From the NCBI GenBank assembly GCA_001600695.1, contig BCKQ01000007.1:316713-380712 (forward strand): a stretch of 64,000 nucleotides of DNA. The letters are read 5' to 3'. Made by a program: the position numbers and the translations under genes. This DNA is from Ascoidea asiatica JCM 7603. Its lineage: Eukaryota > Fungi > Ascomycota. Of this stretch, positions 48,867 through 52,802 are shown one piece after another (the first letter of the stretch is position 1; every line of letters begins with the position of its first letter). Below the pieces are notes generated by a model, which ran no database searches, had not been told where the DNA came from, and was given only the letters and a program-made list of their open reading frames with translations.

Positions 48867-49730
48867 TTAAGAAGAAGAATCCTCTTGATTATGATTAAGT
48901 GTACCAAGAGCTTGTATAATATCAGCAAGTTTAGCTTGTAAAACATCTAAACCTCTAGTTACAATATGTTCTGGACTTATAGAACCAACAGTTTCAACAT
49001 CAAAATAAAAAGTATCTGGACTTGCTTTATAATTAAATTTATCATCAATATTTGAAGGTTCTTCCCATTTACAATTTTCACTTTTTGGCCATTCTTGTAA
49101 TGGATCATCTTCATACCAATAATAAGTATGTTTTAATTTATTCCAAGGATCATATTCAAAAGCAATTGCAGAACATGGAGACCATTTTGCATGTTCTTTT
49201 GAAATACCTTTTTTTGCAATACATCTAACTTTTAATTCTTGATCTTTTCTTAATTTACAAATTAAAACTCCATTACCATTATTATTATTATTTGAATTAT
49301 TTGAATCATTTAAATAATTAGAATTATTAATTACAGGAATACCTAATTTTGCAGAACCACCAGAAGTTACCATTAAATCTCTTGAATAAATACTCATAAA
49401 TGAAGATTCTCCAGTACATTTTGCATCTAAAGTTAAAATTACACTACATTTATCACAATATTGATCACAAGTACAATCTCTTGTATATAATAAATTTTTA
49501 ATATTTTCACTATTTAAAGGTACAAGACCTAATCTATGAGCAATAAATTCATCAGCTAATACAGTTGTATTTGATTCAATTTCAACTAAATCTATTGCTA
49601 ATGTTGGTACTTCACAAAGCATTACTCTTCTTAAAGAATTTGCAACAGATAAATCAACATCTTTTAAAACAAAATTAACATGTTCACTATTAACATCTCT
49701 TATAGTTACTTTTGGTCCTTCTTCACTCAT
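48867..49730 (-). CDS. RPB3: RNA polymerase II subunit Rpb3
   Basis: [45 protein letters not shown] and [14 protein letters not shown]. Confidence 0.97.
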
Positions 49731-50430
49731 ATTTATTTGAACTTAAACTTCAATATATATTCTATATATTCTATAATTATTTCAATTGATTCAAGATTGT
49801 TGTTTCCATTTCATTTTCCACTTCCACTTCATTTTCAATTACAATTTCTGTTTCTACTGTTATTATTATTATTATTTTATTTTTCACCAACGGCAAAACA
49901 ACCGCACAACGGATTTTAGTTCCGTCCCCGGATAAAATGTTTTTTAAGTAGTCCACAGATATGGTCTCACTTTCACTACTTCACCAGCCACACCTCGCCC
50001 ACACCTTACTCACACCACAACCTGATACTCGCTTTCCATTTTCTCACTTTCTTACTCCTTTTCCTGTTTTCCTCTTTTTTCTTTTATCACACTCGCTTCA
50101 GCTCGATCTCTGGGGAAGGAAGGAAATATTTATTGTCAGTGCTAATTTCAACAGGCTTTAACAGACCTTCACACTTTAACACCTGCTGACTAAAAGTCAC
50201 TGTGTTTGCTTACTCCACATTTATCATTCTTAGCTTTATTTAATATCTCATACTAATTTCATGCGATTCAATATTTCATTCTCCTTCTTTTCATACTAAT
50301 TACCAGTATAAATATAAATATAAATATAAATATAAATACAAATAACAATCAATTTCTTATCAAATACTATTCAAATCAAATCGTATCAAACCAATTAATC
50401 AATTAGTCAATTACTCTGTTAATTATCAAA

Positions 50431-50964
50431 ATGAAAGTTGCTTTATTAGGTGCTTCTACACAAATTGGACAATCATTATCTTTATTATTGAAATTGAATT
50501 CAAATATAAATGAATTATATTTATATGATAATAATAATTCAATAGGTATTGGAAAAGATTTATCACATATTAATACATCTTGTAAAATTATTAGTTTTGA
50601 AAAGAATCATTCTAGTGACTCCTCTAAATTTATTAATTTTTTAAGAAAATCAAATATTATCATAATTATAAATGAAAAAAATAATTTAAGAAATTTAGTT
50701 AACTTGATTTCAATTAATAATAATTGTAAATTATTAATTATCTCAAATAATAATCTTCAAATTATTGATAATGAATTTATCAATCTTAAAGATAGTAATA
50801 ATAATAAACTAATAGATTTCAATAATGAAAATGAATGTTTGAATCTATCATTGGCTTATGAAGCTTATGATTTTATTCAAAATTTAAATCTCAATAATGA
50901 TAATGATAATGATAGTGACAATTATAATGAAAATTATGATAATTTTTATACAAGTAAATTATAA
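50431..50964 (+). CDS. Internally deleted malate-dehydrogenase-like protein with PTS1 (SKL); probable degenerate MDH3 positional ortholog
   Basis: MKVALLGASTQIGQSLSLLLK, ELYLYD, GIGKDLSHINT, LLIISN and LSLAYEAYDF match MDH segments in order. Ends YTSKL; only 177 aa. Confidence 0.8.
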   Translation: MKVALLGASTQIGQSLSLLLKLNSNINELYLYDNNNSIGIGKDLSHINTSCKIISFEKNHSSDSSKFINFLRKSNIIIIINEKNNLRNLVNLISINNNCKLLIISNNNLQIIDNEFINLKDSNNNKLIDFNNENECLNLSLAYEAYDFIQNLNLNNDNDNDSDNYNENYDNFYTSKL

Positions 50965-51074
50965 TAAATGATTAATACGATGATTGAAGGTGAAAATAAT
51001 AATTGTAGTAGTAAAAGAAATAGTAATAGTAGTAATAATAGTAGTAATAGTAATAGTAAGTATATAAAAAGATT

Positions 51075-51132
51075 ACATAAATGAACATAAATGAACATAA
51101 TTGAACATAATTAAACATAATTGAACATAATT
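51075..51132 (+). repeat. Degenerate 10-mer tandem repeat (ACATAAWTRA), ~6 copies
   Basis: Seen directly between the convergent MDH-like and GSK3 genes. Confidence 0.8.
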
Positions 51133-51317
51133 AGATAATTAAAAGTAATTTAAAGATAAATTTTTTAATAAAAAAAACAAATAAAATTGATAAAAATTGA
51201 TAAAATTAATAAAAACATATGAAAAAATATGAAAATATATGAAAATATATAAGAATATATAAGAATGATTAATATAATATGAAAATAATATACTATATAT
51301 AAATACATATATAATTA

Positions 51318-52802
51318 TTATATTTTATTTAAATTTGGAATAAAAATATTTTTCAAATATAAATTATTTTTTAATTCATAATCTGTAAAATCAAATAAAT
51401 TTGGTACATTAATATATTCTAATTTATCTTGATATAAACTGATAACTTGATTTAAATTTAAATATTTATTAGTATTATTATTGATATTATTATTTATAAT
51501 AGGAATGTTATTATTATTATTATTATGATTATGATTATTATGATTTCCTGAATTTAATAAAGGTATTGGATAATAATTATCTAATAAATTTCTAAAATTT
51601 GGTAATTTGAAATTATAATTTTTTTGTAAAATTGCAAAATCTCTTAATTCATTGAAAAAATCCAATGATAAAGAATCTAAAGCAGAAATTCTTTCAATTG
51701 GAGAATAATCTAAAAATCTTGACAAAATTTTTATTGTTGAATCATCTATTATATAATTTCTAGTTATACTTGAATGATTATTATTATTATTATTAGAACT
51801 TTGCTGATTATTATTACTATTATTATTACTATTATTATTACTATTATTATTATATTTGTTTAAAACTTTTAATAATGGAATTGGTTTAATTTGTGGAAAT
51901 TTATGATCCATATAAGATGGATTCATTGCTTTAATTTGATTTCTATTTGGAGTACCTAAAACTTTAATAATTTCAACTAATTGATCAATACCACTTTCAC
52001 CAGGAAATAAAGGATGACCTAAAATTAATTCTGACATTACACAACCAACAGACCAAATATCAATTTTAGTTGTATAATTTATTGAACCAAAAATTAATTC
52101 TGGAGCTCTATAATATCTTGAACAAATATATGAAACATTTGGTTCATTTAAATTTAAAATTTTTGCACTACCAAAATCACATAATTTTAATTCTAAAGTA
52201 AATGGATTAATTAAAAGATTTTGTGGTTTAATATCTCTATGACAAATTTTTTTTAAATGAATAAAATTTAAAGCTCTTAATAATTGATAAATATAAATTT
52301 TAATTTCAATTAAAGGTAAATTAAATTTTTTAATTAAATAATAATGAGAAGTTTTATAAATTGTTTCAGGTATAAATTCAAGAATTAAATTTAAATAAAT
52401 TTCATCATTATTTGAATTTGAATAATAAAAATATTTTAAATTTATAATATTTTTATGATTATTAATTAATTTCATAATTTGTAATTCTCTATTTTTAAAT
52501 CTTTTATCTTGTAAAACTCTTTTAACAGCACAAATTTCATTAGATTCAATAATTTTTGTTTTAAATACAATTCCAAAACTTCCATGACCAACCATTTGAG
52601 AATTTGTATAAGTTATACGTTTCATTTCACCAGTATGACCATCTTGAACCTGTTCAGTTATTAAATCATTTGAATTTTCAATACTTATATTATTATTATT
52701 ACTATTATTTATATTATTGGTATTATTATTTATGATATTATTCATTGAATTTATATTGTTATTATTGTTAATATTGTTAATATTGTTATTATCTGAAGAC
52801 AT
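51318..52802 (-). CDS. RIM11: GSK-3 family kinase (Rim11/Mrk1 type)
   Basis: [55 protein letters not shown] and [20 protein letters not shown]. Confidence 0.9.

What the first reader, a model, noticed from the sequence alone, without database searches (positions are those of the whole stretch)
50431..50964. Catalytically gutted mini-MDH keeping the dimer interface and a PTS1: candidate peroxisomal piggyback adaptor
Seen: an intact 177-aa ORF with strong AAAATG context and terminal SKL. MDH segments stay colinear, but the nucleotide loop is altered (GASTQIG for GAAGGIG). The substrate loop (AGVPRKPGMTRDDL-type), catalytic Asp (TxLD..R) and His (GGH) segments are absent. Best conserved are GQSLSLLLK, KDLSH and LSLAY. 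Established: these are MDH dimer-interface helices (E. coli MDH D45 in DLSH and S226 in ATLSM). S. cerevisiae peroxisomal MDH3 ends in SKL, lies next to the GSK3 gene MRK1 as here, and co-imports Mdh2 by piggybacking. Inference: this gene may have lost catalysis and been kept as an import adaptor or regulator that heterodimerises with an active MDH.
Basis: partly seen in the sequence, partly recalled or inferred. Interest (0 to 1): 0.8.

Follow-up and report, generated by a model that had tools for sequence, protein, structure and literature searches.

The report
Truncated, catalytically dead MDH3 keeping SKL
In a very AT-rich budding yeast, the gene in the peroxisomal malate dehydrogenase (MDH3) position has shrunk to a 177-residue protein that cannot be an enzyme but keeps the MDH pairing helices and a peroxisomal SKL tag, so it may ferry or regulate the intact cytosolic MDH; this is untested.

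Summary
Window 50431-50964 (+) is an intact 177-codon ORF ending in SKL, and it reads identically in contigs from two independent studies.

- **What remains of MDH:** residues 1-80 are clearly MDH, and yeast Mdh3 is the best match by sequence and by fold. A second, colinear remnant at residues 125-153 matches the GSATLSMAY helix.
- **What is lost:** the glycine motif is altered (GASTQIG). The substrate loop, the catalytic Asp/Arg/His and the whole Ldh_1_C domain are absent.
- **Position:** the ORF sits beside the GSK3 kinase gene, as full-length MDH3 does in Ascoidea rubescens and Kazachstania naganishii.
- **Rest of the genome:** two mitochondrial-type MDHs and one cytosolic-type MDH with no targeting signal. 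There is no other PTS1-bearing MDH.
- **Signs of selection:** the frame is open at 17% GC, codon usage looks like real genes, and the first 57 residues are almost as conserved as in working MDHs while the rest has diverged strongly.
- **Pairing model:** a complex model places the protein on the cytosolic MDH through the canonical dimer interface (score 0.93, best control 0.00). This may reflect memory of solved MDH dimers.

No ortholog, transcript or peptide could be found. The adaptor idea is therefore plausible (about 0.3-0.45) but unproven. A slowly decaying relic remains a serious rival.

The parts
50431..50964 (+). 177-codon ORF (with stop): truncated, non-catalytic MDH3-position gene
   Evidence: ORF listing and sequence. 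Contigs from two studies are identical. GC is 17%, there are no in-frame stops against 8-49 in the other frames, and P(open) is about 2e-9. The codon-frame score is 0.755 bits per codon against a mean of 0.64 for long ORFs in the window.
50431..50670 (+). Residues 1-80: conserved N-terminal Rossmann core (strands A to D, helices B and C) homologous to MDH
   Evidence: Pfam Ldh_1_N; PDB 5zi2 MDH3, E 3.8e-13; 84 bits against an MDH HMM. Mean identity over residues 1-57 is 52%, against 56-63% among functional MDHs.
50449..50469 (+). Residues 7-13, GASTQIG: altered dinucleotide-binding glycine motif (G10T, G11Q)
   Evidence: Alignment to 14 MDHs in which these columns are 100% and 86% Gly.
50470..50496 (+). 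Residues 14-22, QSLSLLLKL: helix B, predicted dimer-interface element
   Evidence: Conserved columns are kept. Interface residues 14-15, 17-19 and 21-22 in the complex model.
50536..50580 (+). Residues 36-50, including GIGKDLSHINT: helix C, predicted dimer-interface element (D43 = E. coli MDH D45)
   Evidence: Conserved columns are kept. These are the lowest-error contacts of the complex model, involving D43, S45, H46 and I47. The role of D45 is described in PMC10902853.
50803..50889 (+). Residues 125-153: remnant of the GSATLSMAYAGYKF helix (LSLAY; S140 = E. coli S226). Residues 135-144 are in the predicted interface.
   Evidence: Second HMM hit that 0 of 1000 shuffles reach. L139, S140 and A142 fall on invariant columns. 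Interface residues 135-140 and 142-144. AF2 models a helix at 135-157.
50953..50961 (+). Residues 175-177, SKL: canonical PTS1 tripeptide at the end of a low-confidence (probably disordered) tail
   Evidence: Sequence. The tail, residues 156-177, has pLDDT below 50. It is the only one of 24 ORFs of 100 aa or more in the window with a PTS1-type end.
49910..49930 (+). Match to the S. cerevisiae oleate-response-element consensus CGGN3TNAN9-12CCG in the RPB3/mini-MDH intergenic region (a lead only)
   Evidence: It is the only match in the 64-kb window. About 0.23 are expected in the window, and P is about 0.003 for this 700-bp spacer. There are no matches at the malate synthase, ACOX or PEX14 loci.
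50307..50337 (+). Five tandem TATAAAT units 94-124 bp upstream of the ATG (candidate TATA region)
   Evidence: Sequence and regex scan.
51318..52802 (-). GSK3-family kinase gene, convergent neighbour: the synteny marker for the MDH3 position
   Evidence: 65.7% identical to the A. rubescens GSK3 gene that lies just downstream of that species' MDH3-clade gene. 52.9% identical to the kinase downstream of K. naganishii MDH3.
48867..49730 (-). RPB3 gene, divergent upstream neighbour sharing the 700-bp spacer
   Evidence: Best hits are RPB3 proteins, 61% identical to A. rubescens.

Best explanation
This is the lineage's MDH3 (peroxisomal malate dehydrogenase) gene, reduced to a non-catalytic protein that selection still keeps open.

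It retains a compact Rossmann-like domain (residues 1 to about 130), one long helix (135-157) and a flexible Asn/Asp-rich tail ending in the PTS1 tripeptide SKL. It cannot oxidise malate. The substrate loop, the Asp/Arg/His catalytic residues and the whole C-terminal domain are gone, and the NAD-binding glycine motif is altered.

The parts that are kept are the three helices that make most of the MDH dimer interface (helix B, helix C and the ATLSM helix) plus the PTS1. The most likely mode of action is therefore pairing with the genome's only extramitochondrial full-length MDH. That MDH is 363 aa, ends in DLL and has no targeting signal. The pair would then be recognised by Pex5 through the single SKL and imported into peroxisomes. 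This would be piggyback import as shown for Mdh2 on Mdh3 in S. cerevisiae, but with a dead carrier.

Shown: the gene anatomy, the catalytic losses, the synteny, and the absence of another PTS1-bearing MDH.

Inferred: selection, expression, binding, import, and any effect on the partner's activity. The pairing could instead tune or inhibit the partner.
For: Anatomy and losses.

MDH3 position:
- The ORF is adjacent to GSK3, as are the full-length MDH3-clade genes of A. rubescens and K. naganishii.
- The best solved match by sequence and by fold is yeast MDH3.

Selection-like signals:
- 177 open codons at 17% GC, against 8-49 stops in the other frames.
- Codon-frame score like real genes in both halves.
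- Residues 1-57 are 52% identical to MDHs on average, against 56-63% among working MDHs. The whole-protein branch is about ten times the median.
- Within the first 47 residues the only radical changes at conserved columns are the two cofactor glycines.
- Conserved interface columns are kept 14 of 24, against 18 of 66 for the others (Fisher p = 0.012).

Need for a carrier:
- The 363-aa MDH ends in DLL followed by TAA TAA.
- No other MDH domain exists in the genome.
- ACOX, a Fox2-like gene, two malate synthases and PEX14 are present.

Pairing model:
- ipSAE is 0.93 in three runs and the best of 3 controls is 0.00.
- In calibration the mark was reached by 51 of 78 solved complexes and 2 of 108 mismatched pairs.
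- Partner pLDDT is 69 and the runs agree in at least 85% of contacts.
- The interface is residues 14-22, 36-50 and 135-144, with D43 against the partner's L242/S243.

Precedent: Mdh2-Mdh3 piggybacking (PMC7758625).
Against: - No transcript or peptide evidence: no RNA run holds the locus.
- No ortholog of the short form in 5.8 billion clustered proteins, 1.84 billion representatives or JGI metagenome contigs. Conservation across species and dN/dS could not be tested.
- The complex score may only reflect the model's memory of solved MDH dimers. It cannot tell a heterodimer from a homodimer.
- The protein lacks two of the partner-side interface segments (equivalents of 152-162 and 178-182), so the real interface would be smaller.
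- Asn-codon-rich low-complexity sequence is intrinsically poor in in-frame stops, which weakens the open-frame argument.
- E. coli MDH loses activity when its dimer is broken (PMC10902853), and inactive MDH subunits can poison oligomers (PMC5919072). Pairing might therefore inhibit rather than ferry.
- Other peroxisomal enzymes here carry non-canonical ends (TKL, VKL, IDL), so the PTS1 rules in this species are not established.
Confidence: 0.42

Rival explanations
1. It is a decaying relic. After peroxisomal MDH activity became dispensable (for example, replaced by another NADH shuttle), the MDH3 gene lost large internal pieces in frame and is drifting. The ORF, the SKL and the N-terminal similarity are leftovers with no present function.
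For: - About half of the protein is deleted and the whole-protein branch is extremely long (6.9 against a median of 0.72).
- There is no ortholog of the short form anywhere and no expression evidence.
- 40 of the 177 residues are Asn. Asn-rich AAT-type sequence resists in-frame stops.
- S. cerevisiae has a second peroxisomal NAD shuttle (PMC5605654, listed).
Against: - The divergence is strongly uneven. Residues 1-57 are nearly as conserved as in working MDHs while the rest is almost unrecognisable. Neutral drift long enough to erase the rest should also have erased the N-terminus and broken the frame at 17% GC, where the chance of a stop is 0.107 per codon.
- The codon-frame signal is gene-like in both halves.
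- A canonical SKL has survived loss of about 90 C-terminal residues.
Confidence: 0.25
2. It is a functional, non-catalytic peroxisomal protein that works without a full-length MDH partner. Examples would be a homodimer, or a Rossmann-like module that binds a nucleotide or another peroxisomal protein. The MDH-interface helices would then be conserved simply because they are the structural core of the fold.
For: - The model shows a complete six-strand Rossmann-type domain (pLDDT 73, pTM 0.74). ESMFold2 gives pLDDT 69 without an alignment.
- D33 at the end of strand B (the adenosine-ribose ligand position) is kept.
- The interface helices are also the most conserved part of all MDHs, so their retention is not specific proof of heterodimerisation.
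Against: - The glycine motif needed for dinucleotide binding is the one element of the first 47 residues that was radically changed.
- The isolated ATLSM-helix remnant has no role in the Rossmann core, yet it is kept and lies in the predicted interface.
Confidence: 0.18
3. It is a negative regulator. By forming defective heterodimers it lowers the activity or stability of the 363-aa MDH (a dominant-negative subunit), and the SKL serves only to clear the complex into peroxisomes or is incidental.
For: - MDH activity depends on the dimer: the E. coli D45Y monomer is 14,000-fold less active (PMC10902853).
- Inactive subunits can inactivate P. falciparum MDH assemblies (PMC5919072).
- The predicted interface is the canonical one but incomplete on the short protein's side.
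Against: There is no precedent for such regulation of yeast MDH that I know of (from memory). Retention of a canonical PTS1 fits import better than inhibition. Nothing here measures activity.
Confidence: 0.1
4. It is an artefact: a chance ORF or a mis-assembly, not a gene.
For: None beyond the lack of annotation and expression data.
Against: - Contigs from two studies are identical.
- MDH homology is significant.
- The longest open run in 5000 shuffles is 96 codons, against 177 observed.
- No MDH remnants lie in other frames and there is no room for further exons.
Confidence: 0.02

Closest known systems
S. cerevisiae Mdh3 (peroxisomal malate dehydrogenase; PDB 5zi2-5zi4) and the Mdh2-on-Mdh3 piggyback import (PMC7758625)
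   Same: - It is the best sequence and fold match.
- Both have a C-terminal SKL-type PTS1.
- Both lie next to a GSK3-family kinase gene. This was checked in K. naganishii MDH3 and A. rubescens; for S. cerevisiae itself it rests on memory.
- The dimer-interface residues are conserved, and the predicted heterodimer with a PTS1-less MDH leaves the C-terminus free.
   Different: Mdh3 is a full-length (about 343 aa), active enzyme. Here about half of the protein is missing, including the substrate loop, the catalytic Asp/Arg/His and the Ldh_1_C domain, and the glycine motif is changed. The carrier would therefore be purely structural. Gene orientation relative to GSK3 is convergent rather than tandem.
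Ascoidea rubescens malate dehydrogenase XP_020044640.1 (P0122, 333 aa)
   Same: It is the positional counterpart: it lies immediately upstream of the GSK3 ortholog, which is 65.7% identical to the window's kinase. It falls in the PTS1-bearing MDH3 clade (support 99/97). It gives the longest alignment to the short protein (residues 1-119).
   Different: It is full length, with the catalytic D, R and H and both domains intact. Its substrate loop is divergent (AGIGRSSSDISRDELF) and it ends in THL, not a canonical PTS1.
Other piggyback imports into peroxisomes (Pnc1 with Gpd1, SOD1 with CCS, LDH subunits with a read-through LDHBx); recalled from memory, not tested here
   Same: A protein without a targeting signal enters peroxisomes bound to a partner that carries one.
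   Different: In those cases the carrier is itself an active enzyme or chaperone. A carrier that is a truncated pseudoenzyme of the cargo's own family has not been described in the library searched: 0 papers hold 'pseudoenzyme', 'piggyback' and 'peroxisom' together.

Membership tests
Active NAD-dependent malate dehydrogenase (LDH/MDH superfamily, Pfam Ldh_1_N + Ldh_1_C) | Ldh_1_N NAD-binding domain | tested here: inconclusive
   Only profile positions 1-56 of 141 match (residues 1-54, 31.2 bits, cut-off 27). The fold model keeps a full Rossmann-type sheet.
Active NAD-dependent malate dehydrogenase (LDH/MDH superfamily, Pfam Ldh_1_N + Ldh_1_C) | Glycine-rich dinucleotide-binding motif GxxGxxG | tested here: not met
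   GASTQIG: G10T and G11Q, at columns that are 100% and 86% Gly in 14 MDHs.
Active NAD-dependent malate dehydrogenase (LDH/MDH superfamily, Pfam Ldh_1_N + Ldh_1_C) | Mobile substrate loop with the two substrate-binding arginines (PRKPGMTRDDL) | tested here: not met
   The aligned residues are E82, L89 and N91, and most of the loop is deleted.
Active NAD-dependent malate dehydrogenase (LDH/MDH superfamily, Pfam Ldh_1_N + Ldh_1_C) | Catalytic Asp/Arg (TLDxxR) and His (GGH) and the Ldh_1_C domain | tested here: not met
   The D column holds N134. The R and GGH columns fall in a gap. There is no Ldh_1_C hit in the protein or at the locus.
Peroxisomal MDH3 orthogroup of budding yeasts | Conserved position next to the GSK3-family kinase gene | tested here: met
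   It is adjacent to GSK3 here. The same adjacency holds for MDH3-clade genes in A. rubescens and K. naganishii. The orientation differs. It is not universal: Saccharomycopsis and P0138 lie next to a mitochondrial-carrier gene instead.
Peroxisomal MDH3 orthogroup of budding yeasts | Phylogenetic placement inside the PTS1-bearing MDH3 clade | tested here: inconclusive
   The branch length is 6.9 changes per column and the row cannot be placed. The MDH3 clade itself is supported at 99/97.
PTS1 cargo of Pex5 | C-terminal tripeptide [SAC][KRH][LM] on an accessible tail | tested here: met
   It ends in SKL. The tail, residues 156-177, has pLDDT below 50.
PTS1 cargo of Pex5 | Pex5 binding and peroxisomal localisation | not testable with these tools
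   This needs microscopy, fractionation or a binding assay. PEX14, ACOX and a Fox2-like gene show that the organelle exists.
MDH piggyback pair (Mdh2-Mdh3 type) | Carrier keeps the MDH dimer interface and is predicted to pair with the cargo | tested here: met
   D43, S45, H46, L139, S140 and A142 are kept. ipSAE is 0.93 against a best control of 0.00; the mark was reached by 51 of 78 solved complexes and 2 of 108 mismatched pairs; partner pLDDT is 69 and at least 85% of contacts are shared between runs. This may reflect memory of solved MDH dimers.
MDH piggyback pair (Mdh2-Mdh3 type) | Cargo MDH has no targeting signal of its own | tested here: met
   The 363-aa MDH starts directly at MKVTV, ends in IDLL, and is followed by TAA TAA with no read-through extension.
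MDH piggyback pair (Mdh2-Mdh3 type) | Carrier-dependent, Pex5-dependent co-import of the cargo | not testable with these tools
   This needs genetics and imaging.

The most novel reading that the evidence does not exclude
A dedicated pseudoenzyme import adaptor. A peroxisomal MDH has been stripped of catalysis and of half its length, and survives only as a dimerisation module plus PTS1. One catalytic MDH gene could then serve both cytosol and peroxisome, with the split set by how much adaptor is made.
Probability: 0.3. Interest if true: 0.8.

Novelty: new variant of a known kind. Interest (0 to 1): 0.55.

Why it matters
Piggyback import is known only between working proteins. A carrier reduced to an interface and a tag would be a natural minimal adaptor. 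It would show that a pseudoenzyme can be retained purely for targeting, and it would give a compact natural design for sending an untagged enzyme into peroxisomes. It would also define experimentally how much of the MDH interface is enough for stable pairing. If it turns out to be a relic, it is still a clear snapshot of how an enzyme gene erodes in an extremely AT-rich genome.

Tried and rejected
- **Short-form orthologs.** The word-indexed search of 5.8 billion clusters found none at E <= 0.01. The exhaustive HMMER search of 1.84 billion representatives had a best E of 3.9e-10, and nearly all hits matched only the first 50-90 residues (longest: A. rubescens P0122, query residues 1-119). The JGI metagenome contigs gave none. 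The ESM Atlas returned only full-length MDH clusters.
- **Exact look-up.** Neither this protein nor its neighbours are in the 15-billion-protein collection.
- **Close relatives.** RPB3 is at most 64% identical to any database protein, and the GSK3 kinase domain at most 75%. No close species is available, so dN/dS was not possible.
- **Expression.** The run search found only three DNA runs of organism A and no RNA run.
- **A. rubescens RPB3 locus.** It has no MDH remnant, and its nearby kinase is not GSK3.
- **Hidden exons or frameshifted remnants.** None in 49731-51318.
- **Second GSK3/MDH3 locus from a duplication.** The next kinase paralog is only 47% identical, and there is no further MDH domain.
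- **Read-through or cryptic PTS1 on the 363-aa MDH.** None.
- **Phylogenetic placement of the short protein.** Uninformative because of the long branch.
- **ORE element as evidence of oleate control.** There is a single hit upstream, but none at other peroxisomal gene loci. It is kept as a lead only.

Full report
**Observation**

Window 50431-50964 (+) is an intact ORF of 177 codons. It starts at the first in-frame ATG (TCAAAATG) and ends ...YTSKL then TAA. The open frame extends only 8 codons upstream of that ATG.

Logan contigs from two studies (X1 from 2016, X3 from 2023) cover 50354-50994 with no differences and no gaps.

**What remains of MDH**

- Pfam Ldh_1_N matches residues 1-54 only (E 2.5e-7).
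- The best solved relative is 5zi2, E 3.8e-13 over residues 1-61.
- Foldseek on an AlphaFold2 model ranks yeast MDH3 (5zi4, 5zi2) first. The model has pLDDT 73.4 and pTM 0.74.
- An HMM built from 14 full-length MDHs gives 84 bits for residues 1-80.
- The same HMM gives a second, colinear hit: residues 125-153 against profile positions 217-245, the DEVVKAKxGAGSATLSMAYAGYKF region. None of 1000 shuffles reaches its score.
- Residues 62-115 are not significant alone. They do align colinearly (LLIISN..N on LVISNPVN) and are modelled as the remaining strands and helices of a Rossmann sheet.
- No MDH remnant lies in another frame, and there is no room for more exons between RPB3 and GSK3.

**What is lost**

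Ninety alignment columns are conserved at 80% or more in the 14 full-length MDHs. Against these:

- G10 and G11 of the GxxGxxG motif are T and Q.
- The loop arginines are E82 and L89.
- The catalytic Asp column holds N134.
- The Arg and Gly-Gly-His columns lie in a gap of about 85 columns.
- About 90 C-terminal residues are missing.
- No Ldh_1_C domain is detectable in the protein or at the locus.

Malate dehydrogenase activity is excluded, and NAD binding is probably impaired.

**Genomic and evolutionary context**

- The genome (G000, 20.3 Mb, about 23% GC) is a budding yeast with no close sequenced relative in the protein collections. RPB3 is at most 64% identical to any database protein, and the GSK3 kinase domain at most 75%.
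- The ORF lies between RPB3 (divergent) and a GSK3-family kinase gene (convergent).
- In Ascoidea rubescens, a full-length MDH (P0122, XP_020044640.1, 333 aa) lies immediately upstream of the GSK3 ortholog, which is 65.7% identical to the window's kinase.
- In Kazachstania naganishii, the annotated MDH3 (ending in AKL) is likewise followed by a GSK3-family kinase.
- P0122 falls in a supported clade (99/97) of PTS1-bearing yeast MDHs.
- The short protein cannot be placed on the tree, because its branch is 6.9 changes per column against a median of 0.72. Its assignment to MDH3 therefore rests on position, the SKL end and the best solved match.

The genome holds only three other MDH genes:

| Gene(s) | Type | Length | C-terminus |
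|---|---|---|---|
| L001 and L003 | mitochondrial-type paralogs | 340 aa each | QKK, SKA |
| L002 | cytosolic-type | 363 aa | IDLL, then TAA TAA |

The cytosolic-type MDH has no N-terminal extension and no read-through extension.

Peroxisomes and beta-oxidation are present: one acyl-CoA oxidase, a Fox2-like gene, two malate synthases and PEX14.

**Is it still a gene?**

There is no direct evidence. No RNA run holds the locus and no ortholog allows dN/dS. The indirect evidence favours selection:

1. At 17% GC the chance of a stop is 0.107 per codon. That gives P of about 2e-9 for 177 open codons. The other five frames carry 8-49 stops, and 5000 shuffles never exceed 96 open codons.
2. A codon-frame log-odds score trained on 18 long ORFs of the window is 0.755 bits per codon in frame. 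The mean for real ORFs is 0.64, and the best of six frames in intergenic DNA is at most 0.33. Both halves of the ORF score positive.
3. Divergence is very uneven. Residues 1-57 average 52% identity to MDHs, against 56-63% among working enzymes, while the remainder is almost unrecognisable.
4. Within the first 47 residues, 22 of 26 conserved columns are kept. The only radical changes are the two cofactor glycines.
5. A canonical SKL survives at the end of a fast-evolving, low-confidence tail. It is the only PTS1-type ending among 24 ORFs of 100 aa or more in the window.

One caveat applies. Asn-rich AAT-type sequence is naturally poor in in-frame stops, and 40 of the 177 residues are Asn.

**Mechanism**

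The three best-kept elements are the helices that form most of the MDH dimer interface:

- GQSLSLLLK, residues 13-21;
- GIGKDLSHINT, residues 39-49;
- LSLAY, residues 139-143.

In E. coli MDH, D45 of one subunit lies against S226 of the other, and D45Y breaks the dimer (PMC10902853). The equivalents here, D43 and S140, are conserved.

Conserved interface columns are kept 14 of 24, against 18 of 66 for the other conserved columns (Fisher p = 0.012). This is confounded by the N-terminal position of most interface columns.

The complex model with the 363-aa MDH gave the following:

- ipSAE was 0.93, 0.92 and 0.93 in three runs, and the best of 3 controls was 0.00.
- In calibration the mark was reached by 51 of 78 solved complexes and 2 of 108 mismatched pairs.
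- Partner pLDDT was 69, and the runs shared at least 85% of contacts.
- The interface was residues 14-22, 36-50 and 135-144. The lowest-error contacts were D43 to I47 against the partner's L242, S243 and A246.

This shows likeness to the canonical MDH dimer. It may come from memory of solved dimers. It does not show that this copy binds, and it does not distinguish a heterodimer from a homodimer.

In S. cerevisiae, Mdh2 reaches peroxisomes by binding Mdh3, and a single PTS1 suffices (PMC7758625). The most economical reading here is the same process with a dead carrier: the short protein pairs with the PTS1-less 363-aa MDH and Pex5 imports the pair.

**Rivals**

- A slowly decaying relic.
- A partner-independent peroxisomal function of the Rossmann-like module.
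- A dominant-negative regulator. Inactive subunits can poison MDH assemblies (PMC5919072).

**A lead on regulation**

The only match in the 64-kb window to the S. cerevisiae oleate-response-element consensus lies at 49910-49930, in the spacer upstream of the ORF. P is about 0.003 for that spacer. The malate synthase, ACOX and PEX14 loci show none, so it is not evidence of oleate control in this species.

**Verdict**

The thing is a truncated, catalytically dead MDH3-position gene that keeps interface helices and a PTS1.

| Claim | Probability |
|---|---|
| It is a selected gene | about 0.7-0.75 |
| It acts through pairing with full-length MDH | about 0.4 |
| It is specifically an import adaptor | about 0.3 |

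It is a new variant of a known kind (piggyback import, pseudoenzymes), known so far from one genome and from computation only.

Noticed in passing
window 49910-49930: The single match in the 64-kb window to the S. cerevisiae oleate-response-element consensus lies in the GC-richer RPB3/mini-MDH spacer. There are no such matches at the malate synthase, ACOX or PEX14 loci of the same genome.
   Followed up: partly
L013:6001-7002 (Ascoidea rubescens P0122): The A. rubescens MDH3-clade gene beside GSK3 has a divergent substrate loop (AGIGRSSSDISRDELF in place of AGVPRKPGMTRDDLF), a long branch (1.82) and ends in THL rather than a canonical PTS1. Constraint on MDH3 may be loosening in more than one lineage.
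   Followed up: partly
P0136 (Logan-derived protein, 341 aa): This is a full-length MDH-like protein with an N-terminal extension and degenerate catalytic positions: PYKPNMAQSRLF in the loop and NATGLR in place of TLDxxR. It may be another non-catalytic MDH in an unidentified eukaryote.
   Followed up: no
L001 and L003 (G000 contigs C19 and C8); L014 and L015 (C6 and C4): The genome carries two mitochondrial-type MDH paralogs (95% identical over the first 57 aligned residues) and two malate synthases. It has only one MDH3-position gene and no close GSK3 duplicate, so any duplication is partial or old.
   Followed up: partly
L014, L015, L025: The usual PTS1 enzymes have non-canonical ends here: the malate synthases end in IDL and TKL, and the Fox2-like protein ends in VKL. 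The truncated MDH, by contrast, has a textbook SKL.
   Followed up: no
window 51075-51270: The 350-bp spacer between the convergent mini-MDH and GSK3 genes is filled with short tandem repeats (ACATAAWTGA units, AAAATTGAT units, ATATGAAAA/ATATAAGAAT units).
   Followed up: no
window 49890-50200: The promoter spacer is markedly richer in G+C and in C/T runs than the flanking coding DNA. This is the reverse of the usual pattern, in a genome where coding GC3 is 3-10%.
   Followed up: no
L010 and L011: In Saccharomycopsis crataegensis and in the unnamed yeast carrying P0138, the PTS1-bearing MDH lies convergent with a mitochondrial-carrier-family gene, not next to GSK3. The MDH3-GSK3 adjacency is therefore not universal in budding yeasts.
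   Followed up: partly
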